DNA of 63,738 bases, filler included, from Hyphochytrium catenoides (lineage: Eukaryota > Protista > Hyphochytriomycota): the NCBI GenBank assembly GCA_900088475.1. It is 5 parts of 5 records of this genome, joined end to end, with 100 filler letters (N's around TTAATTAATTAA, not from the genome) between each part and the next. Parts side by side here need not be neighbours in the genome. Positions count along the whole stretch, not along the records: positions 24,398 to 44,947 come from FLMG01004524.1; 4 more parts are not named here. One strand, written 5' to 3'. How positions within the stretch are numbered: the first letter of the stretch is position 1; every line of letters begins with the position of its first letter. The translations under genes and the position numbers were made by a program. Of this stretch, positions 24,398 to 43,063 are shown one piece after another. The notes beneath the pieces were generated by a model that saw nothing but the letters and a program-made list of their open reading frames with translations, had not been told where the DNA came from and ran no database searches.

Positions 24398-25268
24398 GAG
24401 AGAGAGAGAGAAGAGAAAGATATATATATACATTATTACCTGCTGATTGTGAACAAACTCGGTTGTGCTTCCTCTTCAGTCTTCCTCCTGGACTCGAAGG
24501 AATGAACTGTACAGTTGCCACTGCGCTCCCTCTCCCCAAAGTAGTTACCTCCTATTTTGTCATCTCTCTGTCTCGTATACTCTGGCCTTCTACCCCATCA
24601 TTCTAAGCTAAGGGTTCACACATCGTCAGCCCTCTGTCTAGCGGACTGTGTGATGCCGGTGATAACGGACAAAGATTCGTCTTTCGACTTGCGACCGAAC
24701 AGCCACCGACAGAACCTGCAATCTCGTCCACGAACACTTTGTGCGCACCATTTGGGAGTCATACCTGTTATGCCTCATTAGCGCTCAAAGCGCTCCGAAC
24801 ACGAACTGTTGCTGAAGCGAAAGAAAGTCCCAGACTTTGAGAGGAAGAAAAGAAGCAGAGAAGAAGATATATACCCGTGGAAGAGAGAAAGAGAAGGAAA
24901 ACAGAGAGAGGCACAAGGAAAGAGACCGGCGGGAGATCTAAGAGAGAAGAGAGGGCAGAAGAGGGGCGGGAGACAGAGAGAGAGAGAGAGAGAGAAGAGA
25001 CACAGAGAGAGAAGGGGGAGATGTATAGGATAGGTTCGCACTGAGCTGGCTGAAGTTCGCAAGGAGGAAATCAACGATGATTGCGGAAGGAAAGTGGATG
25101 ATAGTCTTTCCCGAAGCTTGAAGATTTGAGGAGTTCAGAGTCGACAGCGAAGTGAAGAGCTGCTGGGGTCGGGTTCTGTTCTGGACTCGATACCGTTTCC
25201 CAGCTGCCACTTTTCAGGTGCACCGGACCCGGTCGGCTGCCCATTAAATTGCCTGTGACGTTGCCGCG

Positions 25269-27761
25269 ATGAAAACCATGACGGATACAGAGAAGAGAAA
25301 GGCCAGAGACAAGTTCAGGGAGAATCTATCAGTATGTACCTCTTTCCCTAATGGAACAGAGGACCTAGTTGGAACAGAGAAAGGAGGAAAAGCCAAGACA
25401 GCGGAAGGGCGGTGTGCTGCTCTCAGCACTGTTGAATTAAGTCCTGCCACGCCCCTGCTTCAAACACCGTGCAGGCTTGAGAAGCAGGGCTCTTTGAACC
25501 TGCTGCCTTTGGAAAAGCGTGTGCATGGATACAATCTCCTGATGCTAATGTTTGTCGCAGACGTCATTATTGCCGTCACCACCATGGTAAGGACAAAGGA
25601 GTTGAGAAGTGGTGACATCGTATAGTAGCGGAGTTGAGGGTCCTAGGTTGGCTGAGCACCGGTTTCGAGTACATCTTAGTGATAGGGAGAGGTAACGTGC
25701 GCTATAGAGGTAAAGTGCACTCAGCCTGGCCGGGACTTACTCTCAAGGCAAAGAAAGACTTGTTGTTCCGAGCGGCTGTAGAGGTTGGAAGAATGGTCTT
25801 GGTTCTAATGAACGCTATCCCTGTAGGGTGGAGGTAACAGCTGGATCCAAATGGAAAGAGTAGGTTCTACCCTGAATGAGTACGACTTCCAGCGATCCGT
25901 CGCCTGTTTCGCCACCATCATCGCCAAGGTTATTGCAGGCTATACAATTAGCTACTTCGCCAGGAACAACATGATGGAAGAAGAGAGGTTTGGAATGAAC
26001 GATAGGCGTTCATCCGGTGAGTTTTGACATTTCCGATCATCTGGTCGCCCCTTCCGGGGCTTGGCTTCGCGTGGTCGACTTCTGATATAGAGGAGACGTT
26101 TCCCATTGACAGCTTTCTTCTTCTCACTCTGTATGTTTTTGTCATTTCGCAGCTTAATAAATTGTTATGTTTCCTACCGCCTTAAGACAGAACGGTTGCT
26201 CTTGGAACTCTCTACCACGTCTCCTATTGATCACTTACCTTGTTCTCCAGGGTTCAAGCTGCTAATTCTGATCACGATGATCTTCCAGCTGTTGACGGCG
26301 GTCCTCTTTATCATCTCTCCATTGCTCGGGCCTTGGGTCTTCTACCCAGCTAACATCTTCTGGGGATTGGACTTCTCGTCGGTAGTTATCATCACCTACT
26401 CAAACAAGGTAAGGAAGGAAGATAGAATCCTCTTTAACGCGCACAGTGCCTCTAGAGGCACCAATAACAGCTTCAATCTTCATCTTTTGAGGCACGTGCG
26501 CTCTCACAAAGCTTCCGTACCTTTATATTTTGTGTGGCTATCCTATCGCTGGCAACGCCTTCCTCCCCTTCTCTTCACTATTCTCTGTAGCGATCAGACC
26601 AAGCCTCTGCCACCTCTCCCTTTTGCACCCTTATCGCTCTTCTTGGGCAACTTTTGGACGAGCTAATCTGTCCTCACGTATAGTTCTCACGGTTCTTTAC
26701 TTTACCCGTTCGCCAGGTGCTGGACAAGGAGAATATATCCCAGTATTCCGCCCAGTGGTTTATCGCCTCAGGCATTGGAAGCATCAGTGGGAATCTTCTC
26801 AACATAGTCTTAGCAGCAACCCCAGCGATTCACATCTATGGCAATCTCTACCTCGATCACATCTCGGCCCCTGCGTTGGTGGGGCTCGTCCTCGTGGGCG
26901 TTCTCACCATTTATATCCTTAGGGATTTTGATGATAAAGGGCTTCACACGTGGGAAAGTGCCGAGGAGGAAGCCCAGGACTCTCTTCTTCATCTTTCCTC
27001 AGAGCCAGGCGATCCTCTGCCCCCGAAGCTCCTGATAGTGAGCATCACCTGCTTCAACATACTTGTGTTTGATCTACTGGCAGGAGCATCAGGGACCTTC
27101 TTCTACCCTTGGCTTCACAACCGGCTGGGCTGGCAAAGCGCAAAGATCAGCGCGATGACTCTATGTGTCTCTCTTTCCTGTATCATAGTCCTAACAGCCT
27201 TCAGCAAATTATCCGCCATATACAACTTCAAGAAGCTCAATGTGTGGCTCGCGTGTCAGGTAGGAGGAAGTGAAGTGTGGGAGACAGAGACAGGAATCAA
27301 ACAGTAAGAAAGAAGCGCGGCGACATTAACACTACTTCTTCTCATTGCAGATTGTTTTTCTCTTCGCTTTCGTCGGGATTATCCGCCAGGCGAATCAGTA
27401 CGAAGCTGTCCTCAGCCTTCTACTGGTAGGGACCGACTTCTCTACTCTTCTCGGATCGTCTTGCCCTCTGTCTAACTCCTATATGCCTGCTTAGATGTCA
27501 CTGGCATCCACAGTAGGTGGTTCTACCCTCCTCTCTTTCTACTCAGGCTTCATCAAGCTGCATCCAGGAAACAATGTCAAATTTCTTAGTATCTGGGAGG
27601 TGACAAGAGCCATTATCGCAGTCTTCGCGCCTACTTTGGCACCGCTCTTTTGGTGCTGCCGCTATACTTTGATGATTGGTGGCACAGTGGCTCTCGTCAT
27701 AGCTATGAAGCTGGGATTACTTATACGCTATAAAACAGCTAAGCTGGGAGATGACTTGTAA
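25269..27761 (+). CDS. MFS-type membrane transporter, multi-exon (start uncertain)
   Basis: In-frame exons: ...YNLLMLMFVADVIIAVTTM|GGGNSW...ACFATIIAKVIAGYTISYF...|GFKLLILITMIFQLLTAVLFII...TYSNK|VLDKENISQYSAQWFIASGIGSISGNLL... and further hydrophobic exons to the stop at 27761. About 12 TM segments with a central loop. Confidence 0.7.
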
Positions 27762-28566
27762 GAGCCGAATGGAGGCGCTGTATGTATAGAGCTAAGGACA
27801 ATATTCTAGCAATGAATAGAGTGTCTTTATCCATAGAAGTTGCCTAAAAGGCAGCGTTGAATGGCTTAGGACGACTGTGCAGCCACCTCTGTTAGTTTGC
27901 GGCGGCTAAGACCGTCATTCTTCTCTCAGACCCTCGCTAAGGAGAGCATCCAGTCCGAATGCAGATGTTGGCCTCCTGCCCATGAACGCCTACGGACGGG
28001 CGCTAGAGGAGCCGCATAGTAGTGATAACCTTGACAGAGTCTCTCTCTCTCTCTCTCCCGAACACTTTCTAAACTTTCTATAGTTATGGGAGCGAGGGCC
28101 TCTATCACAAGCGCCTTCCTTATGGCATCTCTTGTCCGCTGCGGCGGCACCTTGGTGATGATCTCTCTCGTCCCGATGTCCCTTCACGAGATGATTGTTG
28201 AGAGGAATGAAGATCAGAAGAAAGCTGCATGCTGACGGGAGTGATGTGGCGGGCAAGAGAGACGTTACCGGCCGTCAGAACCTTCCAACGAAACATTGCC
28301 ACGTTTCGGAAACAAATGGGCTTGTTTACTTTCCTGTGGTGGTGTGAGGAAAAGGCAGCCCACGCTGAAGATTGCTCCAGGGACGGATGAATCTTTCATA
28401 AGTCCACCTTGCAAGCCACAGAATCTTTCCTGATAGCCGGTAACGCTAAAAGGCTTACCCCTCTGGTTCCGACCTTCGACGTGCTTTTTCTCTCTCGCAC
28501 TCTCTCTTTTTCTCTCTGTCTCCTACTTTTTCTCTGTGTCTCTCCTATCTCCTCTCTTTCTCTCTC

Positions 28567-28644
<78 letters not shown>

Positions 28645-28939
28645 CCTCGCTCTCGCTTCTCGCTCTAAAGGCTTTGATACTTCTCACTCTCCTCTTTACT
28701 GTGCTCTCCGCTTTCTCACACACCACCTCTCTCGAACTACCTTTCTCTCTTTTCCATCCTCTCTTTCTTGCTGTTGCTGGTCCTTGCTATTGCCGACTGG
28801 CTCTGCGGTCTTTCTGAAAGCTCTCATCGCATCACATTCATATCTCCAATACTGTGCACCGCGCCCGAGAAGGAGAGTGCATCGGACTGGCGACTCTATT
28901 GAAAGCAGCAGAGATTGATACTAAGATTGGAAAGGGACC

Positions 28940-31900
28940 ATGAGCGCAGTGGAGAAGGAAGAAGGTAAGGCCAGTGCACGGACTCGTTGAAGCAACCATC
29001 GAAACTGTATCCTGCACTTAGCCGACAATCGCCTTAGAGTCTATCTCCATATCCATCATTCTCATTAGTCTTGCCGGTCTCCTCTACCAGTGGCTCCTCG
29101 TTGCGTTTGTACCTACTCATTTTTCGATACAACTGACCACGCTTCTGACTGGCTGCGTCAGCCGCAAGGCAGCAGCTAGAACAGACTTCCCTAAACAGCC
29201 AGGCTAATGGGGGAGAGGAGAGACAAGGAGGAGGAGGAAAGTCTAGGGTGAAGGCACGCCTTATCAAGTCTAGCGGGCCTTCGATAACAGGCGAAGGGGA
29301 CAAGAAGATCGGCGGGCCTTTCTCTGTCAGCCGCCATCCCGCTTTCATCTCCAAGAGGAAGGATGTGTTCGATCGCATCCTAGAGAAGAATAGAAAGGAG
29401 CTAGAGTGTGAGTTTCTGCACTTACCCTCTTCTCCTATCTCCAACACTTTTAGTCCTGCCCGCTACTTCCTCAGGGATCATTTCACTTCTTTATTCCATC
29501 ATTTATCTGGCAGATTGCCTCCATTTTCATAGTCATGGCCAACTAAGCCGTGGTCCTCATGTACTGGGTCTGTCTGCCCTTCCTCAGTACCCTACATGTC
29601 TCACATCTCCGCGTATATCTGACACACGCGTTCTGCTTGGAATTGCTCCTTACGTGTGACCCTACTCGCCCTTCCAGCCAAGCCGCGATTCCCCATCAAA
29701 GTCACTCTTCCAGATGGAGCCGTGAAGGAAGGCGTCGCGTGGGAGACCACTCCGCTCTCCATTGCCCTTAGCATTTCTAAGGGTTTGGCAGACAATGTTG
29801 TCGTCGCTAAGGTAATGGAGCTATCTGCGGACTCGCAACCTCCCCCCTTTTTGTTGCTTCGGATAGCCTCGCGTCGCCTCTTTATAAATCTCATCTCCGT
29901 TAACATCATTCATTCCTGTAGGTGCGGTACACAGCATCGGTTGAGAAGGAAGAAGGAATGGTAAATGCGGAAGAGGAACTTGAAGACCACGATCATCAGG
30001 AAGAAGAGGTAGGAAGAGAACTGTACCTATACTGGCGGAGGGCTACGAGGGTAGTACTCCGAGAGTGGGAGGAGTTAGGGTGCTCGCCTTTGCTCTTTCT
30101 CTGGTTGGACTTCTGATGCTCTCGTCCTCTTTGCTGTTAGAGTGAAGCAGAGCTGTGGGATCTGACCCGGCCGCTTATCGGAGATTGCGAAATGTCTCTC
30201 CTAAAGTTTGACGAACCTGAAGGCAAGATGACCTTCTGGCACTCTTCTGCGCACATTCTGGGTGCCTCACTTGAGGAGCTGAAGGGCTGCCATCTTACCA
30301 TTGGGCCACCGCTAGCCAACGGCTTCTACTATGACGGCTATATGGGCAGCGAGTAAGAACTGCATGTTCCTTGTCCTCCTTTTCCCATACCTCCGCCACC
30401 AGCTTGTTTTCCTTATCATGTAGTATGCAAGCTAGCTGATGGGAGTCTGGACTCTTCTCCTTAAGCTGTAGAGTAGCACCCTGCAGGCCTTCCTGTCAAT
30501 TCTACCGATACCACTGATGCCTCAACGTTACTAAGATGTTCTTGCACCAGGGCGATTCATGAGTCCGACTACAAAGAGCTGGAGGGAGTGGCCCAGAAAC
30601 TTTGCTCTTCGAAGCTTCCCTTCGAAAGACTCGTTCTTAGCAAGGAAGAGGCCCTAGAGGTACAGCACACCAATTTTGTTGGCTCAGCCAGCTCGTGCTG
30701 GCTCTCCGGCCGCCTGAACCTCCTCTTCCGGCCGCCTCTCTCGTAATGCTTTCCTTAAAGGTGTCTCTGTGCCGCACGCTTAAGGATTACCTTGCTTACT
30801 GCTATTATCCACCACTCTCCCTCACATGCTCGCTATACTTGGCTTCATGTCGGCAGTACCTCTTACTCGTACTTGTCGTGCGTTCTTCTTATGATTCTAC
30901 TTCCCTGTTGGCAGCTGTTTTCGGACAATCCTTTCAAAGTGCAACTCATCAAGAACAAGATCCCAGATGGCGCCAAGACTTCAGTGTACAAGTGCGGGGA
31001 CTTGGTCGACCTTTGCCGAGGTATTTGGCGCTAACTTCACGCTTTTCTGATCCTCTAGTACTTTAGAGACCCATTGACATTCAGTGAGCTAACTCCCATT
31101 CTGCCCTCAACGTTCATTACTGCCATGGCATTCCACCCTAACCAACCTTCTGTCAAAAGGCCCTCATCTGCCCAACACCGGCAAGATCAAGGCATTTGCG
31201 GTCATCAAGAATTCGTCGGCGTATTGGCTTGGTAATGCAGAAAATGACAGGTATGCCCTGACAAAGACAGAGCGGTTGAGGGTAGTGCCTCCCGTTGACG
31301 CGATTGACAGCACTTCGTTGCATGCTTTAAAGTAGTGCCTTGTCCTGTCTCTCTCTGTTCCTTGACTATATCCTTGTTCCCCCCTACGTGGGTGCGGTTC
31401 TCTGTTCCTTTTTCTCGGTTGTCTTAATAACATTGGCCTTGGTCCTGTTGCAGTCTACAAAGAGTCTACGGTATTGCATTCCCTGACAAGAAACAGTTGA
31501 AGGAATGGCAGCACTTTCAGGAGGAGGCTGCCAAGAGAGATCATAGAAGGATCGGGGTGCAGCAGGAGCTCTTCTTCTTCGACGACTTGTCTCCTGGCTC
31601 ATGCTTTATGCTTCCTCACGGTACCAGAGTGTACAATAAGCTCATGGACTTTATTCGGCAACAGTACAGGTAATGATCCAATTAGGACTGTGCAATTTAT
31701 GTCTTCATAGGTTATAAGCACGTACGAGAAGATGCGCGTCCATCTTCCAACGAGAACGAGCGTTTCCTTGAAAGTGCTACTCCCGCCGCATCACGGCTTG
31801 TCTGCGGTCCTATTCTACAATCGCCCAACGGCATCAACCCTCCATTGGCTCCTTCCTATCTATCAATACTCTTTGCGAAGCCTTCCACCACCCATTGACT

Positions 31901-34715
31901 TTCCTACCTACGTTCTTTCTTAGGGTTCGTGGCTACGACGAAGTCTCTAGTCCGAATATCTTTGACATGAAGTTGTGGGAGACCTCTGGACATGCTAAGC
32001 ACTACAAGGATGATATGTTCCTTTTTGATGTACGTATGGTTGATTCCTCGTTGTCCATTTCTCGACCTAGGTCTGGCCCTATGGTCAGTTTCTGCTGCAG
32101 TCTGCTAGCATGCAATCCCTAAGTGATGTCCTGCCCTAGGTTGAGAACAGAGTCTTTGGGCTGAAGCCGATGAACTGTCCTGGCCACTGCGTCATGTTTG
32201 ACCACCGCTTGAGATCCTATAAGGAATTGCCCATCCGGTTCGCCGATTTTGGGGTGAGTGAGAGCCCAACAAGCCTTGAGTCGCGCTATCTTTCTCTTCA
32301 AAGATTCGTCGTACTTGCTATGACGTTACTTTGAAAGTGGGTTCGACGCTTTTCCTTGCCCTGGCAGCTGTTAATCGCTTAGACCTCGTTGTTACCGTGT
32401 GGGTTGACCTCCGACTATCCATCCTTTCTTATGACTTCCAATAGGTTCTTCACCGGAATGAGATGAGCGGTGCGCTTTCAGGACTCACTCGCGTGCGCAG
32501 ATTCTGCCAGGATGACGCACATATCTTTTGCCGGAAGGATCAGGTGAGCAGGGCTCTCTGAGGAAGTGGCCAATCGTACCACCCCCGTTATCATGCGCAG
32601 ATGCCTCTAACAGCCTGCCCTTACCTTGGGATGTTGTTTAGATCAAGCAAGAAATCTTACAAATACTTGACTTTATCAAGTATGTCTATGGTGTCTTCGG
32701 AATGACCGTAAGTGAACCGCTGCTACTCTCTTAGGACCTCAGAATCCTATCTCTCCTTTCCCTCGCAGTTTCTGCTCGTTATGGCTGTCTTCTGGCCGTA
32801 ATAGACTTGCTGACATTGCTCATCGTTTCCTCTTGATCCCAGTATAAGCTAGAGCTCTCTACAAAGCCCGCCAAGGCCATGGGTGATCCTGCACTTTGGG
32901 TCATGGCTGAGCAGGTTTGTCCTTGTCAATTGCTCTTACTGTCACTCCACCGCGTTCCATTGTAACTCTTTCAATTCCTTGGTTTGCTCCGTGCAATCCC
33001 TTTCGTATGCCTCAAAAGTCCATTGTCTGATATAGTCGAATGGGCAGAGGCAGCCGCTACTAAGCTTCTGTTGCCTGTGGTCATGTCAAGTCTACCCTAA
33101 CCCAAAGCACCTCTCCTATCTTTTCTCGCTCATGTGTGACACAGCAACTAAAGGAAGCTCTTGATGAGACGGCAGGGCCAGGAAACTGGCGGGTCAATCC
33201 AGGCGATGGTGCGTTCTATGGCCCTAAAATCGATTTCAAGGTACATTTGCCATTAATTATGGGTGAAAAAATGGGCTTGGTGTTAGCAAGTGTAGGTAGC
33301 AAGAGACGAGGCCGTATGTGGCTGCTAGTCAGTATGCCTACAAACATAAGAGACCCAAGGGGAGAGTCCGGTTTACAGGCCTAACGACAAGCTACCAGGT
33401 AATGGACGCCCTCCAGCGCGTCCATCAGTGCGCCACCGTGCAGTTGGACTTCCAGCTGCCTATCAACTTCAAGCTAAAGTACCGAAGTGATAAGCAAGTG
33501 CAACACGAGGAGGGCGCGGACGGAGGAAGCGAAGATAGGTAAGAAAATGGCTAAACCTTTGTAGCTACCTTGGAAAATAGCTGGCATACTTTAGAAGTGC
33601 AATTAGCGAGGAATCTTAGCTATCAAAGCGAGAGCAAAAGGGAGTTGAGCTCAAGGGTGGAGTGACAAAAGAAAACCTGATGATGGCCACAGTTCTGATC
33701 CTCATATAAACCGCCCTTTTCTTCAACCTTTCCCTCCATCCCTTCGTCCGTCCATCCTTTACACTCCAGTGCCTTCGAGACTCCAGGTGAGATCCTTTTC
33801 ACTTTAATCGTTCGCCTGACAGATGAGCTGACCTGTTCGTTTCTTTTCCTCTCCCTTGCTTGACTGCTCATCAGTTATCGTACACCGCGCTGTTTTGGGA
33901 TCTGTGGAGCGGATGATGGCTGTGTTGATTGAACATTTTGGAGGGAAGTGGCCGTTCTGGCTCTCTCCTAGACAGGTAAATAGATGCGAAGTAGTGGACC
34001 AATCCTTCTTTTCTGTGTGCAGCGCCGGTGTTTTATGTTTTTTCTTGTGGGAATAGTGGTGAGGTTATCTCTTCTGTTACTTGTTTGGGCCTTTTAAATA
34101 GCTAGATGCATACCTGCAGGACCTTCGCTTCATCGAAGCTAATGCATTTGCTTGTTCTCTCGAAGGTCCGTGTCGTACCTGTCAGCGTAGCGAATGCGGA
34201 ATACGCTCGCGAAGTATACCGCAAAGTGTCTGCTGCTGGGTTCTATGCTGAGGTGGACGACTCCACTAAGACCCTAAACAAGAAGATTAGGGAGGGCCAG
34301 CTGGCACAGTTCAACTTTATTCTCGTTGTCGGTGCCAAAGAACAGGTACGCGAAAGGCATTGAAAGCTGAAAGAGGGCGCAAGCACCAGAAAGAGAAGAG
34401 GAGCATGCCTGTGAAGGAGGGAGAGAGAGTCAGAAGGGGAAGGAGACGGAGTGAATGAGAACCCTCATCCGTCCAGTGTAGCAAGGGCCCTGTGGCGAAC
34501 CTAGTCTTGGTAAACTGTTTGCTCAGGCGACGTATGCTATCTATTACCGCGATTTTCGAACCTTGGTTTCTCGTTCTTCCGTATCTTACTCCTATTTCCC
34601 TCTCTAGGAGGATGGATCTGTTAACATCCGTACCCGCGACAACCAAGTGCTTGGGGTCAAGCCACTTGATGAGACCCTTCAAATGTTCCACCAGCTGTCC
34701 GCAGAGTTCAAGTGA
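28940..34715 (+). CDS. TARS: Threonyl-tRNA synthetase (eukaryotic cytosolic type), many exons
   Basis: TGS domain (IKVTLPDG...WETTPLSIA), [95 protein letters not shown], anticodon-binding C-terminus; TGA at 34713-34715. Confidence 0.97.
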
Positions 34716-35454: not shown

Positions 35455-38215
35455 CTACACTCCTTCTTGAGCTCCTCCTTTTGTCTCATCTCCTTGGTGA
35501 TCCTCACCGTCCCTTGCTACACCTCCCCGCGGTAGTTGAATGCACAAGAAGTCCGCAGCGGCATATACACAGACATTAGGGCCAAGGGTTTGATGTGCTT
35601 GAAGGAGGTCGGCGCCAAGAAGGTCTCTTGTGCTATCAAATCTGCCCAGAGGAAGGTAGACATTAGCGCTCAGCGGTCAATGCCTCCACTTACAGGTAAA
35701 AAGGTACCTGGCGCCGAAGTGAGTCAGGACTAAATGCTTTGTCCGCACTTTTCGAGCAAAGTCCGCAGCAATATTGGCGGTTGCATGCTGGCTTACTTGC
35801 GCCTTCGGACGACCAAAGTGGGGAACAATAGAAAACACGATTAGTTTTCTCCCGTTCTGTACAAGATGTATTAGATGGTATGAGAACTGACCCGTCTTGG
35901 CTGGCTGTTGGGCAATGTTGCCTCATGTATCACTAACTGCTCAGACAGCACATAGAAAGGGAAGAGAGCATGATATCAATACCTAAGTACTCACTAGGAT
36001 TGAACTGCAACATCAGTAGGGAAGACGAGACTGGGACCAAGAGCGGACAGGAGCAGGGGAAAGATGGCAGAGAAGACGACGCACAACTGAGGAGCCGAAG
36101 GTGTCTTAAAAGGCTTACATCAGCATCCAAAGAAAGTGGCACGGAGGACGAGGCATCGTACGTGTCTCCCAGAACCACTACCTTCCGTCCTTTGTGAGGC
36201 TTGCCGGTAACCTGAACCCAGAGAGGGAATGGCGAATATATGAGAATGGTGCTCTTCAAATTCTAGGCAGACCAGCACAGATGAGAAGCTTTGGAGAGGA
36301 CAGGATCCCCTTTGATAGAGCAAATGGAGTTGAGCAAGCCTCAGTAGGGGAGAAACCACTGACGCGGACTACGCCCTCGAAGTACGTGCGTTTGAGTCTA
36401 TGGAATGCCAGTTATGCAGTGGAGCTAAAGGAAAAAGGCACTAACCTCCTGTGGGTGAACCCACTCCCCTGAAGGTAACTGCACACTTTCCCCTTTCTTC
36501 AGCCGAGCGTAGTTTGGACCCGGATGCAACCCTCGCCTTTTAGCTGCTTCAACATCTAGCTTACCAGGTATGTCCTTCTCTTGCAAGACGTAGCTGGGAG
36601 GGACGAGAGCAAACGAATCCTTAGTAAGAAAAGAGTCAAAGAAGGGTCAATAAAAACCGAAACACGAGGACAGAGCCAGAAGAGTAGTTCTACATCTACA
36701 CCCTTAGTGATATTTACAAGAGGAGGTCAGAGAGACGGAGAGACGAATAAGGTAATGCATTGAATGAGAGAGTCAGTTCCCTCTCCTCACCCAAAAGTTG
36801 TCACAACGTGGTGTATCCGTGTGGCTTGGACCCGTAGGTCATCCTCTAGCTCCATCTCCCAGACCTGTGTCGTACCCTCCGGGCTACTCGGTCTTAGAAT
36901 ATGATGGCTGATCAGCTTGAAATAGATACAGCCAGAATCGTGGCAAAGAGACATTAGCGATAAGTCAGGCGAGGTTAGAGCAGCAGGATTTAAGTAGACC
37001 TGACGGGCGGTATCTCAGAAATAGGACAAGGCCAGATAACGGCTGAAGATGTTTAGGGGACTAATGTAGACATGACTGCAAGAACATACAAAGAATCTAG
37101 ATGAGTACCGCGACGCCAGAGGGAGCACGCTACACATAGCACTGTACGAATAAGAGCCAAAAGAGTTCTCTCGCTTTCCACCCCTAAGGCTTTACAAGAA
37201 TTCTCTATTACCTGATACGATTGAGACGGCGCTTCCTCCGTTGCGTGACTGGACCGGGAATGGAGTTCAATGATATCGATAGGAACTATGAGCTGACTTT
37301 CTGTGGACAACACCGAATTCACTAGAAAAGAGTAAAGTCCCGGCGGTCCATATATCTTGAGTCCCCGCTCGCAGTTTGCAGCTTCCATCGACTCGCGCTC
37401 TTGGTAGATGCTCCTTTGGCAGGTGAGAATGACGCCAAGTAGTCCCAGGACGTGGTCGCCGTGCATATGAGTAATCAAAATGTTCCTCAGCGCTGTAATG
37501 GATATTCGACTGCATCTCTGAAGCTGAACCTGAGTGCCTTCTCCACAATCTATCAGAACGGTGTGCTTTTCCATCCGAACTGCTACTGACGAGCTACCCC
37601 GATTGGGACCTATCAACGTTTGTTAGACAGTAAAGGCGAAACTATAAGAAAAGGTGGTCGGAAGATATAGCCCAAAGGCTACGAGGGATAGGTAGGGAAG
37701 TGAGAAGCGAGCCGGCAGCTGACAGCGACAGCAACCAAAGCCATCACGAGACGAGCACGTACACCCCCAAGATTACGCTGGGTGAGTATGGAGGAAGCTA
37801 AGGCGTAGAGATAATTGGGCGAGATGGTGTTACCAGGCGACCCAGCTCCAGTCCCAAGAAACACTACTTCCATGCCAGAGAAGTCCGGGTGTGCTGGACC
37901 TCCTTCTGCCTTGCTATGTGCGATGTAGCTCGGATAAGGATTGCCTCCAATGTGATAGCTTTCGAAGATTGAAGGCGCGACATTAACACTCACTCTAACT
38001 ACCTCATTGCCCTTCCTGCCCTCCGCATTAGTAGACAAGCTTGTCCAAGGGCCGTCTATGCTACGGAAACGATAAACAGAGGCGGAATAATGCTTCTTCG
38101 CCCATGCTACTGGGTAATTCCTGCGGGCGATAATTGGGTGAGCCCATCTTGAGGGGACTAAGCGAGATTCTGCGACCCCCCGGTACCCTGACAATGCCTC
38201 AAGGCAGCGCTTCAT
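35455..38215 (-). CDS. Ribonuclease Z, short form (rnz/ELAC1-like) with N-terminal targeting-like extension
   Basis: MEVVFLGTGAGSP, LIDCGEGTQ, ITHMHGDH (HxHxDH), IYGPPGL, exosite GLHPGPNYARLKKGE, VVLGDT, IHEAT, HAT, LTHFGAR, AAADF across GT-AG exons. Confidence 0.92.
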
Positions 38216-38426
38216 GGCGTTGCCCACCTCTTTTGAACTGAGGTCTTCGGAGTTCGTAGCGAACAGCAAGAGGGCTCCAGTCGCTAGCTAATGTCGGCCA
38301 CAGTCTTCCAGAGCTTTCTCGCTGCTCAAGGATGAAAAGCCCATCAATTCACACAGCTACTACTTACGCGCCTCAATCGGCATATCAGCTTCGACTGCTT
38401 TGTCACTGGGGAGGATTAGTTGAGGA

Positions 38427-39253: not shown

Positions 39254-39932
39254 ATGAAGCTTGTTAGGTAACGAGTCTACATGATAATTTCTTCCATCAT
39301 AGGGCAGGGTCTAACGTTTTGAGTAGATTTTTGATGAAGCTGAACGGTGAGCCCGTGACCATAGAGCTGAAGAACGGGACACTTGTGCACGGAACTATTG
39401 AAGGTTCGGGAAACATACTGCCCTTCAATGTCGTCTTCTGCGTGAGCAACTCGTTACTGTCATATCCATGTGTTCACAAAGTTGGCCGTAAGAAGCATGC
39501 CATACATCCCTTATCTCATCCCACTCCGTTAGACGCCCAATCGTAAATGTTCAATTTCTCCTTCCACCAACCTACTTTTCTCGTCCTCATATTAGTGCCA
39601 GGGATCGTAGCTATGGGTCTGCTCAGCTCACTCTATGCCCTCCACCTCCCTTACCTATTTCTGTGACTGCAGGCGTGGACATTAGTATGAACACGCATTT
39701 GAAGAACGTGAAGATGACGCTGAAGAACAAGAACCCAGTCAATTTAGAAAAGCTCAGCATTAGGGGAAACAACATCAGATACTTTATCCTGCCAGACTCA
39801 CTCAATCTGGATACACTTCTGATTGACGACACGCCCAAGCAAAAAGTCAAGCCGACAACAGTGGGCATGGGCAGAGCAGGCAGAGGCAGAGGAAGAGGAA
39901 GAGGGCGGGGTCGTGGCCGAGGGCGCCCTTAG
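39254..39932 (+). CDS. SNRPD1: Small nuclear ribonucleoprotein Sm D1, 3 exons
   Basis: MKLVR|[25 protein letters not shown]|[16 protein letters not shown]...[22 protein letters not shown] plus a GR-repeat tail. Confidence 0.97.
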
Positions 39933-40354: not shown

Positions 40355-43063
40355 CTAGCAGTAGATAGGGATGTAGATGAAGCTGCAGATTGGGGGCTTG
40401 GTTGGCGCCGGTGTTGGAGCGGGAGTCGGAGCTGGTGTGGGTGCCGGAGTAGGAGAATTGGTTGGCGGAGAAGTCGTCCGCATTGAGGCGGCAGGAGTAG
40501 GAGCAATTTGACTGGGAGCCGGGGTGGTAGGCACCAAAGGCGACGGAGCAGGAGATGGAGATGGCGGAGAGCCACTGCCGCCACTGAGACCAGAAGAGAC
40601 CGACACATCCGTGAAACGAACAGTCCCTGTAACCCCGGGCCGTGCAAGGATGTGCAGGGTCATGCTCTGGGGAATCTTGCAGGGCTCATTTACTGACAGG
40701 CTAACCTCTTTCCAGCCATAAGAACCGGTAGTGAAGCTGTTACTATGGATAGAAGAGGAGCCATCAGCCCACTTCATCTCCAAATAGAAGCCAGCCACGG
40801 AGCCAGAAGAGCTCTCAGGAAACGTGAGTCCGTCAGCACTAATATTGGCAGAAACAGTGAAGATCCCAGCCGTAATGGCAGAAGCATTGAATGCGGAGAT
40901 TGGCTGGAAGGCCCCTGACAGATCTCCATTTGGCCTATTGAGGGTCCCATAAGTCTTCTTCTCCCCTCCTTCTTCTCTTCCGAGGGTATAACCCAAGCCA
41001 TCTACAAACCACCAATCGTTGTTTTCAACTCGCGGATTCTGTACAAGAGTAGTCGGGGCACTAGGAGGCGCTGATGGCGCGNNNNNNNNNNNNNNNNNNN
41101 NNNNNTGCCGATCATGCCATCAGAGCCAATATTAGCTGTAGCCGAGTGACCACAGTCATCTAGGGCCATGCGGGCTAGGTAAGCGGTGTGGAGGTCCTGC
41201 TGCTTCAGAGTTTGTACCGGAAGCTTTACATAGCGCATCACCTTTTCCAGCGTCTGCTCGATCCACAGTGTCACAAGGCTCTGACGAGCGAACTTGGTGA
41301 TGGTAGATACCCCAGAGGGAGCTGGATGCATGACTAGGTTGGCCTGATGTGTCATGTAGGGATCATGTTGCAAGGCCAGAAGCTGACTAGCACAGCGCCA
41401 GGACTCTCTTTCATAGAAAGTCTTGAGGTCAGTCATGCCTAACGTCTGATTGTAAAAGACATTATACAGCTGTAGGTTCTTTTCAAAGTCTTGCATGTGG
41501 AAGTACACGTTTAGGGCGTAGCGTGGGATGATGAACATTCCAGTATGCCCGTTCCGGGTGCTGTTGGTAGTCCAGCCGTGATAACGGTTGCCCTTCCAAG
41601 GCAGTAGCTGTGGGTAGCTGTTGTCCCCGACGATGGAGGTGATCCCATGGTTAGAGATTACCTTCAGAGCGTCTCCATTAAAGAGACCACTGATTCTGGG
41701 TGTTACCATTGCGGCGGGAGAACTCCACGGCTTACCCACAAGACCCAAAGCCTTCGCGAAGTATTCATTAGCCGTTAGCTCGACGTCGGCGTCAAAGGAA
41801 GTGATGTTGAAAAAGGCTAAGTGGGTGTAAGTGTGGGTCAGCCAGAAGAATTCCTTTTGTACATTTTCGTCCCTAGACTTGCGGAAGAGCGGATCCTTTA
41901 GGAGCCAGGTCATCACCTCCAATAGAGAGAAGTCTCTGAACTTATTGTTAGGAAGCATGGTCCACACCCGAGTCCCGCTGCCCAGGGGCTTCTGCCATCC
42001 AAATGGAGACTCTTCCAAGTATTGCAGAACTACTGGGTTTTCCCAAGGGTCTTGGGTTTGTCTGGTTTCCTTAGCCACTCCCATGCCATTGTATGCCAGC
42101 TCTAGCTTTACGCTAGAGCCTGCTGGAAGAGCTTTATTTAGCGCGCGTTGCCATTGGATCAATTCATCTACATCTTTAGCCGAGACTCTGCCTATCGTCT
42201 TCTCATTAAGTGCAGGATTAATGTCCCATAACTCCGTGGGCAGGAAGTAGTCGTCCACCTGAGTACTGAGGAGAATCCTTCTAGAGCCAATGAAGAGACC
42301 TTTTGTCACCCATTCGGACCAGATGTAGGAGAGAGCCACAGAATTGGCGTCTGGATTACGGGTNNNNNNNNNNNNNNNNNNNNNNNNNNNNNNNNNNNNN
42401 NNNNNNNNNNNNNNNNATTCCTATGTAAGGGGTGCCACCTGGTGAGTTCTTATTGAGGATAAGTAGAGGTGTGAGAGACGGCGATGGAGTCTTTACATAC
42501 GAGCCGATAGTGTAGACGCCAAATTGGTAAGGGGACTGGCTGAGGTCAAATAATGCCTCAGGCTTTACAATGGAGGAACGGACAGTTTGCTTCCATGCTT
42601 CAGTGAGAGTGGCAGTGGTGCCAGCAGGTGGAAGGCCATTCGTGGTAAAGTCTGCCTGGAAACGCATCCCGGGCACAGTGTCGGGATTGGACTCGAGAAC
42701 AACTCTTCGCACTCCATACTTGACCTCATAGGCTTGCAAGGCTGCATACTGACTCGACGTCAGGGCATCTACCCAATAGTTTCCTCCTTGGTCGTAAGTG
42801 GTTGGGCCCTTGACGATGCAGGAGTACTTGCCATGTCCATCTGCATGTTCAAGCGAAAGGCCCCCGCTGAGTCCTTTCGGAGGAATGACGATTTCGTCGA
42901 AGGGGATGGAAGCACTTTGGAATGCTCGGCCAGCGTCACTGGCGCCATTTGAGAAAGCTTCGTTCACGATAACGGCGCACTTCAGATCCACCTCAAGAGC
43001 AGCAGCGAGCTGAGTGATCGTAGCTAGCGCCGCGGCGAGTGTGACCAGTCTGAAGTGTGTCAT
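40355..43063 (-). CDS. Secreted Agd3-like (CE18) polysaccharide deacetylase with C-terminal beta-sandwich CBM-like domain and Pro/Thr stalk
   Basis: Three ORF pieces separated only by N gaps. Signal peptide; LQAYEVKYGVRRV; GSRRILLSTQVDDYFL; WLTHTYTH; MVTPRISGLFNGDAL; HDPYMTHQANL, which are the Agd3 family metal/catalytic motifs. Then TLVQNPRVE...GTVRFTDVSV and (PTPA)n. Confidence 0.8.

What the first reader, a model, noticed from the sequence alone, without database searches (positions are those of the whole stretch)
40355..43063. Agd3/CE18-type galactosaminogalactan-deacetylase homolog in a flagellated protist, with extra domains
Seen: QVDD, HTYTH and MTHQAN motifs intact in a secreted protein with no visible introns, next to the host gene SmD1 on the same contig. 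Known: Aspergillus Agd3 (CE18 with N-terminal CBM87) deacetylates alpha-1,4-GalNAc in GAG to make a cationic adhesive biofilm polymer, and is encoded with gtb3, ega3, sph3 and uge3. Here those partners are not adjacent, and the protein adds a CBM4/9-like sandwich, a PTPA stalk and a PPICSFIYIPIYC tail. Inference: either an undescribed GAG/Pel-like exopolysaccharide system in this lineage, or an enzyme that modifies microbial biofilm polymers.
Basis: partly seen in the sequence, partly recalled or inferred. Interest (0 to 1): 0.75.

Follow-up and report, generated by a model that had tools for sequence, protein, structure and literature searches.

The report
Agd3-type polysaccharide deacetylase gene in a protist
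This is a nuclear gene for a secreted enzyme of the Agd3 family, which in moulds strips acetyl groups from a sticky biofilm sugar polymer; it sits in an intron-rich eukaryote, groups with copies from an animal relative rather than with fungal ones, and carries an extra sugar-binding-like domain and a stalk.

Summary
On the minus strand, 43063..40355, three open pieces separated by two assembly gaps encode: a signal-like N-terminus plus CBM87 (Pfam 54 bits); a complete CE18 Agd3 deacetylase domain (Pfam 266 bits, E 6e-79; PDB 6NWZ E 6e-48) with all four catalytic motifs; then an all-beta domain, a 66-residue Pro/Ser/Thr/Ala stalk and the PPICSFIYIPIYC tail.

At the nominal gap lengths the pieces are out of frame. 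They are colinear with the one close relative (L001, 52-59% identity), and gap 1 fits it to within 2 nt. Gap 2 stands where L001 has 58 residues, so the Agd3 C-domain is unread or missing.

The gene is native. Its last piece is contiguous with a three-exon SmD1 gene 423 bp away, and its GC3 matches the neighbours.

No GAG partner gene lies in the 20.5-kb piece. Chytrid homologues are unclustered too.

CE18 is not confined to fungi and bacteria. Databases hold copies from Corallochytrium (six), a green alga, brown algae and an MMETSP transcript. The window protein groups with Corallochytrium copies at moderate support (79/86).

The host could not be identified, and "flagellated" could not be tested. 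The substrate is inferred, not shown.

Verdict: a sound CE18 homologue with a variant architecture, of moderate interest.

The parts
42417..43063 (-). Piece A: start codon, signal-like N-terminus, and the Agd3 N-terminal/CBM87 region (215 codons plus 2 nt up to gap 1)
   Evidence: Open frame from ATG 43063. Pfam CBM87_Agd3 54 bits, E 2.4e-14, residues 38-132. Matches 6NWZ chain 29-141, E 3.7e-8. 52% identical to L001 product P0122.
42364..42416 (.). Assembly gap 1 (53 N), inside the CBM87-to-CE18 junction
   Evidence: L001 has 19 residues here. Frame is restored if the true length is 55 nt (or 52 or 58).
41106..42363 (-). Piece B: complete CE18 (Agd3_CE) catalytic domain, 419 codons
   Evidence: Pfam PF25115 266 bits, E 6.4e-79, profile positions 1-364 of 366. 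Matches 6NWZ E 6e-48, chain 224-615. 765 homologues in the representative library.
42250..42261 (-). CM1 QVDD: catalytic base Asp and first metal ligand (Agd3 D377/D378)
   Evidence: Aligned to 'qidd' of 6NWZ. Residue roles from PMC7229062. Coordinates.
41821..41835 (-). CM2 HTYTH: the two metal-binding His (Agd3 H510/H514)
   Evidence: Aligned to 'htfth' of 6NWZ. It lies about 140 residues after CM1, as in Agd3.
41515..41532 (-). CM3 IIPRYA: Arg that positions the catalytic base (Agd3 R613)
   Evidence: Aligned to 'vnprwa' of 6NWZ. Role from PMC7229062.
41338..41355 (-). CM4 MTHQAN: catalytic acid His (Agd3 H668)
   Evidence: Aligned to 'mfhqan' of 6NWZ. Role from PMC7229062.
41082..41105 (.). 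Assembly gap 2 (24 N), where the Agd3 C-terminal beta domain is expected
   Evidence: L001 has 58 residues between the flanking matches. No PF25117 hit in the window.
40595..41080 (-). Piece C, part 1: short Pro/Ala linker, then an extra all-beta domain (about 160 aa; NPRVENNDWW ... GFYLEMKWADGS ... TGTVRFTDVSV)
   Evidence: No Pfam hit at E<=1. 33-34% identical to the L001 C-terminal domain. Profile matches to the C-terminal regions of P0041, P0038/P0314 and the P0094 cluster. Atlas gives CBM_4_9 clusters at 0.94. AF2 gives an 11-strand model at pLDDT 57. Fold hits are to many CBM jelly-rolls at background Z of 6-8.
40397..40594 (-). Pro/Ser/Thr/Ala-rich stalk (66 aa, ending in PTPA repeats)
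   Evidence: Composition P22 S11 T11 A9. L001 has a shorter Thr/Ala-rich counterpart.
40355..40396 (-). Tail PPICSFIYIPIYC plus stop codon
   Evidence: At 13 residues (mean hydropathy 1.35) it is too short for a membrane span or a typical GPI signal. It is not conserved in L001.
39254..39932 (+). Neighbouring host gene SmD1 (three exons), convergent with the deacetylase gene; it shows that the locus is nuclear and eukaryotic
   Evidence: Sequence reading. LSM domain hits. 4209 SmD1 homologues, best 87-89% identity.

Best explanation
The locus encodes a secreted, metal-dependent polysaccharide de-N-acetylase of family CE18 (Agd3 type).

Shown: an N-terminal signal-like peptide; an Agd3 N-terminal/CBM87 region; and a full CE18 barrel. 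The barrel has the catalytic base Asp and metal-binding Asp (QVDD), two metal-binding His (HTYTH), the base-positioning Arg (PRY) and the catalytic-acid His (HQAN). An additional beta-rich domain follows, shared with a few other non-fungal CE18 proteins, then a Pro/Ser/Thr/Ala stalk. The gene is native to an intron-rich eukaryotic chromosome, is itself intronless in the 875 codons that can be read, and is not clustered with polymer-synthesis genes.

Inferred: after secretion the enzyme removes N-acetyl groups from an extracellular N-acetylhexosamine polymer, most likely alpha-1,4-GalNAc-rich (GAG/Pel-like) by analogy with Agd3. This would make the polymer cationic and adhesive. The extra beta domain would add glycan or surface binding, and the probably O-glycosylated stalk would hold the enzyme away from the cell surface.
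For: Family and catalysis:
- Pfam Agd3_CE 266 bits against a cut-off of 27.6, covering profile positions 1-364 of 366; CBM87_Agd3 54 bits.
- 6NWZ matches at E 6e-48 and 3.7e-8, with all four motifs aligned. Residue roles come from PMC7229062.
- CM1 to CM2 spacing is about 140 residues, as in Agd3.

Secretion: a hydrophobic N-terminus directly after the Met, five N-x-S/T sequons and the stalk composition.

Native gene:
- Piece C is contiguous with SmD1.
- GC3 is 0.51-0.59, against 0.44-0.62 in the neighbours.
- The pieces are colinear with L001.

Extra domain recurs: the A2 profile hits P0041 (4e-5), P0038/P0314 (about 1e-4) and the P0094 cluster (0.02).

Affinity: window plus L001 pair at 100/100. 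They are sister to Corallochytrium P0052 plus P0025 at 79/86, then to Corallochytrium P0054/P0057 at 76/80. Forcing them into the fungal clade costs 33.8 lnL, AU p 0.037.
Against: - No biochemical evidence; the substrate is inferred from one characterised enzyme that is about 35% identical.
- No synthase, GH114, GH135 or epimerase in the 20.5 kb available, so there is nothing to show that the organism makes a GalNAc polymer.
- The reading frame is not continuous at the nominal gap lengths.
- The Agd3 C-domain is unread or absent at gap 2.
- The CBM assignment of the extra domain rests on a 0.94 Atlas score, a sub-threshold Pfam hit on L001 only (E 0.068), and fold matches at background level on a model of pLDDT 57.
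- The tail is too short to be an anchor.
- Tree supports are below the starred level. The AU group was named after the tree had been seen, and its constraint also excluded Monoraphidium and P0002/P0014, which sit with the fungi in the free tree.
Confidence: 0.65

Rival explanations
1. The enzyme acts on foreign polymers. As a secreted CE18 it would modify or help digest GalNAc-rich matrix polysaccharides (Pel, GAG-like) of bacteria or fungi that the organism eats or competes with, rather than maturing a polymer of its own.
For: No synthesis or hydrolase partner in the piece. The relatives in Gonapodya and Cladochytrium are unclustered too. Corallochytrium carries six diverged copies, and chytrids carry multi-unit proteins; such expansion is typical of substrate-foraging enzyme families. 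An extra CBM-like module and linker is the usual architecture of secreted glycan-degrading enzymes (general knowledge of CAZyme architecture).
Against: Deacetylation alone does not depolymerise. The only characterised CE18 enzymes act on the producer's own polymer (PMC7229062; one search lists PelA-type work). Eukaryotic genes are rarely clustered, so absence of neighbours says little.
Confidence: 0.2
2. The enzyme deacetylates a different polymer of the organism's own wall, such as chitin or another GlcNAc-containing glycan. In effect it would serve as a chitin-deacetylase analogue.
For: CE18 shares its catalytic machinery with CE4 chitin and PNAG deacetylases (PMC7229062). The window protein is only about 35% identical to Agd3. 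It belongs to a clade with no characterised member.
Against: CBM87 and the CE18 groove are conserved as a unit. Agd3 is specific for GalNAc stretches according to PMC7229062. There is no direct evidence for any alternative substrate.
Confidence: 0.1
3. This is not one functional gene. The scaffold would join fragments of paralogous CE18 copies across the two gaps, or the locus would be a pseudogene.
For: The only two N runs in the piece fall inside this gene, and the pieces are out of frame at the nominal gap lengths. Relatives occur as multi-copy families. The closest relative, L001, itself carries a frameshift. Gap 2 is about 150 nt shorter than the matching stretch of L001.
Against: Each piece is fully open from gap to gap, with no stop in 215, 419 and 241 codons. 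All catalytic residues are kept. Order and orientation match L001. Gap 1 agrees with L001 to within 2 nt. Gap lengths are estimates only.
Confidence: 0.08
4. The sequence is bacterial or fungal contamination of the assembly.
For: The gene is intronless in an intron-rich neighbourhood. The family is common in fungi and bacteria.
Against: The C-terminal piece is physically contiguous with SmD1, which has spliceosomal introns. GC and GC3 equal those of the neighbours. No database protein exceeds 59% identity.
Confidence: 0.02

Closest known systems
Aspergillus fumigatus Agd3 (CE18 founding member with CBM87; PDB 6NWZ; PMC7229062)
   Same: Same N-terminal region/CBM87 followed by a CE18 barrel. 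All four catalytic motifs (DD, HxxxH, the Arg of CM3, the HQAN His) and the long CM1-CM2 spacing are kept. Both are secreted.
   Different: Only about 35% identical. Not encoded in a GAG cluster. The Agd3 C-terminal domain is unread or missing. The window protein adds a beta-rich domain of about 160 aa, a 66-aa Pro/Ser/Thr/Ala stalk and a short hydrophobic, Cys-containing tail. The gene is intronless and lies outside the fungal clade in the tree.
Unnamed homologue on Logan contig SRR12417984_66919 (L001; products P0122 and P0001)
   Same: 52-59% identical. Same order of signal, CBM87, CE18, extra beta domain and Thr-rich stalk. Sister to the window at 100/100 support.
   Different: GC 59% against about 50%. 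One frameshift. Keeps 58 residues where the window has gap 2. Shorter stalk, and a different tail (VRVLRHIL). No SmD1 downstream, so no synteny.
Corallochytrium limacisporum CE18 paralogues (EukProt Clim_evm139s149, 63s232, 36s88, 49s251, 76s215, 17s46)
   Same: CBM87 plus CE18 proteins of a non-fungal opisthokont. They are the nearest named relatives in all three trees.
   Different: At most about 40% identical. Long branches. None matched the window's extra C-terminal domain in BLAST or profile searches. Uncharacterised.
Chytrid and other early-diverging fungal CE18 proteins (Cladochytrium, Phlyctochytrium, Gonapodya, Neocallimastix)
   Same: CBM87 plus CE18, and likewise not in GAG-type clusters. 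34-39% identical to the window.
   Different: They form a clade with the Dikarya copies that excludes the window. They usually carry a detectable Agd3_C domain, and the two loci examined (Gonapodya, Cladochytrium) are longer than their coding sequence. Some are 3-4-unit tandem giants.
Bacterial PelA-type and Agd3-like deacetylases of Pel or GAG-like operons
   Same: Same chemistry, partial de-N-acetylation of an alpha-1,4-GalNAc polymer. This is the functional model.
   Different: They are encoded in operons and are periplasmic or exported by bacterial systems. They are much more distant in sequence (20-28% to Agd3 according to PMC7229062).

Membership tests
CE18 (Agd3 deacetylase family) | Match to the family profile over the whole catalytic domain, above the curated cut-off | tested here: met
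   PF25115 at 266 bits against a cut-off of 27.6, profile positions 1-364 of 366. 6NWZ E 6e-48.
CE18 (Agd3 deacetylase family) | CM1 Asp-Asp (catalytic base plus metal ligand) | tested here: met
   QVDD at 42250-42261 aligns with Agd3 D377/D378.
CE18 (Agd3 deacetylase family) | CM2 HxxxH metal ligands, more than 120 residues after CM1 (beta2 insertion) | tested here: met
   HTYTH at residue 177 of piece B, and DD at residues 37-38, giving a spacing of about 140. The criterion is from PMC7229062.
CE18 (Agd3 deacetylase family) | CM3 arginine that coordinates the base | tested here: met
   IIPRYA aligns with the Agd3 'vnprwa' (R613).
CE18 (Agd3 deacetylase family) | CM4 catalytic-acid histidine | tested here: met
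   MTHQAN aligns with the Agd3 'mfhqan' (H668).
CE18 (Agd3 deacetylase family) | Metal-dependent de-N-acetylation of GalNAc polymers | not testable with these tools
   Needs an enzyme assay.
Agd3 three-domain architecture | N-terminal CBM87 | tested here: met
   PF25116 at 54 bits against a cut-off of 27.6, but only profile positions 12-106 of 214. 6NWZ chain 29-141. The part holding Agd3 W334/W344 falls at or in gap 1 and could not be read.
Agd3 three-domain architecture | C-terminal beta domain (PF25117 Agd3_C) | tested here: inconclusive
   No hit in the window. The expected position is gap 2. L001 has 58 residues there but also gives no PF25117 hit.
GAG biosynthetic gene cluster (uge3, gtb3, agd3, ega3, sph3) | Adjacent GT4 synthase, GH114, GH135 and UDP-Glc/GlcNAc 4-epimerase genes | tested here: not met
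   A six-frame Pfam scan of 113 ORFs in the rest of the piece gives only LSM, ThrRS domains and metallo-beta-lactamase, plus a weak MFS match. Only 16 kb on one side and 1.9 kb on the other could be examined.
CBM_4_9 (PF02018) for the extra C-terminal domain | Profile match above the cut-off, or a clear structural match | tested here: inconclusive
   The window gives no hit at E<=1. The L001 domain gives E 0.068, 14 bits against a cut-off of 25.9. Atlas gives 0.94 to CBM_4_9 clusters. AF2 pLDDT is 55-57. Foldseek TM is about 0.4 and VIA Z is 6-8.4, spread over many CBM families and other jelly-rolls. The PDB profile search found nothing.
GPI-anchored or membrane-anchored surface protein | C-terminal hydrophobic stretch of about 15-20 or more residues after a small-residue omega site | tested here: not met
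   The tail is 13 residues with mean hydropathy 1.35 and is not conserved in L001. No predictor was available.

The most novel reading that the evidence does not exclude
The window protein, L001 and the Corallochytrium paralogues would represent a separate, non-fungal (possibly holozoan) lineage of CE18 deacetylases. Members would carry their own accessory glycan-binding domain and mucin-like stalk. This would mark an undescribed cationic GalN-type extracellular polysaccharide system in unicellular relatives of animals or other protists. The intronless state in an intron-rich genome would hint at acquisition by transfer, for example via a giant virus, given the virus-like context of homologue P0002.
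Probability: 0.2. Interest if true: 0.7.

Novelty: new variant of a known kind. Interest (0 to 1): 0.42.

Why it matters
Agd3-type deacetylation turns a neutral GalNAc polymer into the cationic glue of Aspergillus and Pel biofilms. The published range of CE18 is fungi (mainly Ascomycota, with five species listed under Chytridiomycota) and bacteria.

This is an intact, native CE18 gene in an intron-rich eukaryote. It groups with Corallochytrium copies, and database copies also exist in green and brown algae. Together these suggest that such polymers, or enzymes aimed at them, are far more widespread among eukaryotes than described. They also give a concrete gene to test for adhesion or matrix formation in a protist.

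The recurring extra beta domain is a candidate new binding module attached to CE18. The practical value is limited until the host is named and the substrate is measured.

Tried and rejected
- Host identification. The SmD1 exon-3 search gave best hits of 87-89% scattered over Glomeromycota, chytrids, oomycetes, plants and animals, so it places nothing. No near-identical protein for any window product was found, so the genome is apparently not in the protein collections. Paper searches for the run and assembly accessions found nothing.
- Synteny with L001: none; its downstream gene is not SmD1.
- Metagenome scans with the C-domain alignment and with piece B both found nothing. An IMG/VR scan with the CE18 alignment also found nothing, so the giant-virus idea has no support beyond the gene content of L002.
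- Structure of the extra domain. Both AF2 jobs gave pLDDT 55-57. Foldseek and VIA gave only generic jelly-roll matches. The PDB profile search was blank.
- A first AU run wrongly included the Corallochytrium rows in the 'fungi' set because of a name filter. It was abandoned and is not used.
- Contamination and recent transfer were rejected on contiguity and composition.
- GPI or transmembrane anchoring was rejected on tail length.
- Steps left out under the rules. The three pieces of the deacetylase were always searched apart. The L001 row in the trees was read through its frameshift with X.
Full report
**1. What is in the sequence**

The piece has only two N runs, 41082-41105 and 42364-42416. 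Both lie inside one minus-strand gene that runs from ATG 43063 to the stop at 40355-40357. Each of the three stretches between the gaps is open from end to end:
- Piece A, 42417-43063: 215 codons plus 2 nt.
- Piece B, 41106-42363: 419 codons plus 1 nt.
- Piece C, 40358-41080: 241 codons.

At the nominal gap lengths the pieces are not in one frame. The offsets are 700 nt (1 mod 3) and 1283 nt (2 mod 3). That is why the mechanical ORF list shows three ORFs with out-of-frame read-through tails. All searches therefore used the pieces apart, by reference.

**2. Identity of the protein**

- Piece B matches Pfam Agd3_CE (PF25115) at 266 bits, E 6.4e-79, over profile positions 1-364 of 366.
- Piece A matches CBM87_Agd3 (PF25116) at 54 bits.
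- Piece C has no Pfam match even at E 1.

Against PDB sequences the only real hit is Aspergillus fumigatus Agd3 (6NWZ). Piece B scores E 6e-48 over chain 224-615, and piece A scores E 3.7e-8 over chain 29-141.

The Agd3 paper (PMC7229062) defines four catalytic motifs. In the alignment these correspond to the following window features (coordinates):

| Motif | Agd3 residues and role | Window sequence | Coordinates |
|---|---|---|---|
| CM1 | D377 base, D378 metal | QVDD | 42250-42261 |
| CM2 | H510/H514 metal | HTYTH | 41821-41835 |
| CM3 | R613 positions the base | IIPRYA | 41515-41532 |
| CM4 | H668 acid | MTHQAN | 41338-41355 |

CM1 and CM2 are about 140 residues apart. This is the long spacing that distinguishes CE18 from CE4.

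**3. The ends of the protein**

The N-terminus (MTHFRLVTLAAALATITQLAAA|LE) is a typical signal-like hydrophobic stretch. L001 starts in a comparable way.

Piece C starts with a short Pro/Ala linker. A segment of about 160 residues follows, which AlphaFold models as an 11-strand all-beta domain at low confidence (pLDDT 57 and 55). Evidence on its fold is weak:
- The Atlas feature search puts it next to CBM_4_9 clusters at 0.94.
- The equivalent L001 domain gives a sub-threshold CBM_4_9 hit, E 0.068.
- Foldseek gives TM of about 0.4.
- VIA gives Z of 6-8.4, spread over CBM22, 27, 28, 15, 35 and other families, but also viral capsid, MAM and TNF-like jelly-rolls. That is the tool's stated background level.

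So 'beta-sandwich, probably a carbohydrate-binding-like jelly-roll' is a reasonable lead, and 'CBM4/9' is not established.

A profile of the window and L001 domains also finds the C-terminal regions of other eukaryotic CE18 proteins: P0041 (E 4e-5), P0038/P0314 (about 1e-4; one member is an MMETSP transcript) and the P0094 cluster (0.02). They share a motif GFY..i.w.DGS....tGs.gW......G...fDDv. The module is therefore a recurring companion of CE18 outside fungi.

Next comes a 66-residue stalk (P22 S11 T11 A9, ending in PTPA repeats), and then PPICSFIYIPIYC. This tail is too short for a membrane span or a usual GPI signal and is not conserved in L001. An acceptor-like CTGCAG just before it means that the true C-terminus needs RNA evidence.

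**4. The gaps**

The only close relative in 5.8 billion clustered proteins and 1.84 billion representatives is on a Logan contig, L001 (SRR12417984; GC 59%). It is 59% identical over the C-terminal part of the CE domain and 52% over piece A.

L001 carries the same domain order on one strand, with a single 1-nt frameshift near 'MLPG'.

- Across window gap 1, L001 has 19 residues (57 nt). The window has 53 N plus 2 leftover nt, so the gap estimate is right to within 2 nt and a continuous frame is plausible.
- Across gap 2, L001 has 58 residues, in the position of the Agd3 C-terminal beta domain. The window has 24 N. Either the gap is underestimated by about 150 nt or the window protein lacks that segment.

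Continuity and frame are thus inferred, not shown.

**5. Is the gene native?**

Piece C is contiguous, without N, with SmD1 at 39254-39932 (+). SmD1 has three exons and two GT-AG introns. It is convergent with the deacetylase gene, 423 bp from its stop.

The rest of the piece holds a many-exon threonyl-tRNA synthetase (about 29.6-34.4 kb), an RNase Z/ELAC-type metallo-beta-lactamase gene (36.4-38.3 kb, minus strand) and a weak MFS-like gene (26.1-27.8 kb).

GC is flat across the piece. GC3 of the deacetylase pieces is 0.51-0.59, inside the range of the neighbours' exons, 0.44-0.62. Contamination and recent transfer are therefore unlikely.

The 875 readable codons contain no intron, although the neighbours are intron-rich. 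By contrast, the Gonapodya and Cladochytrium homologues are longer than their coding sequence (3827 nt for 811 aa; 2463 nt for 748 aa).

**6. Partner genes**

A six-frame Pfam scan of all 113 ORFs of 62 codons or more outside the gene found only LSM, ThrRS domains and metallo-beta-lactamase. There is no GT4, GH114, GH135 or epimerase.

This is not unusual outside Pezizomycotina. The Gonapodya copy sits in a tandem CE18 pair among unrelated genes, and the Cladochytrium copy lies next to a sugar transporter and unrelated genes.

**7. Relatives and range**

phmmer against the representative library gave 765 hits. All are at or below 42% identity except L001.

Named relatives include many chytrids (Phlyctochytrium, Cladochytrium, Nowakowskiella, Dinochytrium, Fimicolochytrium, Blyttiomyces, Chytridiales sp.), Gonapodya, Neocallimastix, Ascomycota and Trichosporon.

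Non-fungal relatives also exist:
- Six Corallochytrium limacisporum proteins with EukProt Clim_evm identifiers. That prefix is used for this species in bioRxiv 10.1101/2020.11.12.379420.
- Two proteins from a Monoraphidium minutum MAG.
- Two brown algae, Choristocarpus and Scytosiphon.
- One MMETSP transcript.

The 2020 Agd3 paper reports the family only from fungi (mainly Ascomycota, plus five species it lists under Chytridiomycota, including Gonapodya) and 45 bacterial species. No held paper links CE18 or galactosaminogalactan with Corallochytrium or Holozoa.

**8. Phylogeny of the CE domain**

Three trees were built: FastTree on 175 rows, IQ-TREE quick and IQ-TREE careful, the last two on 67 rows and 398 columns under LG+C20+F+G4. 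The bootstrap of the careful tree had not fully settled.

All three agree on the placement:
- Window plus L001 pair at 100/100.
- They sit with Corallochytrium P0052 and the Logan protein P0025 at 79/86.
- Corallochytrium P0054/P0057 join next at 76/80.
- In the quick tree this group lies outside a clade (SH-aLRT 95) that holds all fungal copies, Monoraphidium and P0002/P0014.

Forcing window plus L001 into one clade with the 32 fungal rows costs 33.8 log-likelihood units, AU p 0.037. This rejection is marginal. The group was named after the tree had been seen. The constraint also separated the fungi from Monoraphidium and P0002/P0014. Several Corallochytrium rows have long branches.

My reading is that the protein is probably not of the fungal CE18 clade and is nearest to the Corallochytrium type. 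This does not identify the host.

The intron-rich neighbourhood argues against Corallochytrium itself; that rests on my own recollection that its genome is compact and intron-poor, which I did not check. In addition, no Corallochytrium SmD1 appears among the best hits.

**9. How it most likely works**

Shown: a secretion-type N-terminus, a CBM87-type groove extension, and a complete CE18 active site.

Inferred from Agd3 and the Pel deacetylases: a metal-activated water is deprotonated by the first Asp of QVDD, which is held in place by the CM3 Arg. It attacks the N-acetyl carbonyl of a GalNAc residue in an alpha-1,4-linked polymer. The CM4 His protonates the leaving amine. Partial deacetylation gives a polycationic, adhesive polymer.

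The extra beta domain may add binding to the polymer or to the cell surface. The probably O-glycosylated stalk may act as a spacer.

My estimates:

| Claim | Probability |
|---|---|
| CE18 membership | about 0.95 |
| The protein is an active deacetylase | about 0.8 |
| The substrate is a GalNAc-rich polymer | about 0.5 |
| That polymer is the organism's own | about 0.35-0.4 |

Rivals are action on foreign biofilm polymers, action on chitin-like polymers of its own, and an assembly mosaic or pseudogene. Contamination is practically excluded.

**10. Verdict**

I rate it a new variant of a known kind. It is an Agd3-family enzyme with an added, recurring beta domain and a mucin-like stalk, in a non-fungal-type clade.

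Interest is moderate. The family, chemistry and fold are known, and databases already hold non-fungal copies. However, the eukaryote-wide spread and the holozoan affinity are not in the literature and are directly testable.

Noticed in passing
window 41082-41105 and 42364-42416: The only two assembly gaps in the 20.5-kb piece both fall inside the CE18 gene. This may reflect assembly breaks caused by paralogous copies, since relatives occur as multi-copy families.
   Followed up: partly
L002:1-12360 (GCA_013565615.1, JACCDO010083003.1): The CE18 homologue P0002 lies in a compact, same-strand gene array. The array holds a CBM87-only ORF, a polysaccharide pyruvyl transferase, an ATP-dependent DNA ligase, a YqaJ exonuclease and a cyclin-like ORF. 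The context resembles a giant virus or an endogenised virus. An IMG/VR scan with the CE18 alignment found no viral copy.
   Followed up: partly
P0005 (Phlyctochytrium planicorne, 2398 aa) and P0006 (Chytridiales sp. JEL 0842, 1926 aa): These chytrid proteins carry three to four tandem units of CBM87, CE18 and Agd3_C in one polypeptide. They may be gene-model fusions of tandem genes or true multi-unit enzymes.
   Followed up: no
L003:5745-13827 (Gonapodya prolifera KQ965772.1): Two CE18 genes sit in tandem, flanked by unrelated genes (enoyl-CoA hydratase, MOSC, tripeptidyl peptidase II). There is no GAG-type cluster.
   Followed up: no
L001:2000-2100: The closest relative of the window gene has a 1-nt frameshift near the 'MLPG' codons. 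It is therefore called as two overlapping ORFs (P0122, P0001). This may be an assembly error or a pseudogene.
   Followed up: partly
window 24780-25070 and 28400-28900: Long CT/GA microsatellite-like tracts give spurious ORFs rich in SLSLSL and ERERER on both strands.
   Followed up: no
window 29623-34360 (+), 36428-38287 (-), 26091-27758 (+): Neighbouring host genes: a threonyl-tRNA synthetase split into at least nine exons, an RNase Z/ELAC-type metallo-beta-lactamase gene, and a weak MFS-like membrane protein. All are intron-rich, in contrast with the intronless CE18 gene.
   Followed up: partly
P0115 and P0060 (Monoraphidium minutum MAG); P0151 and P0139 (Choristocarpus, Scytosiphon); P0314 (MMETSP): CE18 homologues are present in green and brown algae and in a marine protist transcriptome. 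This range is not mentioned in the Agd3 literature held here.
   Followed up: partly
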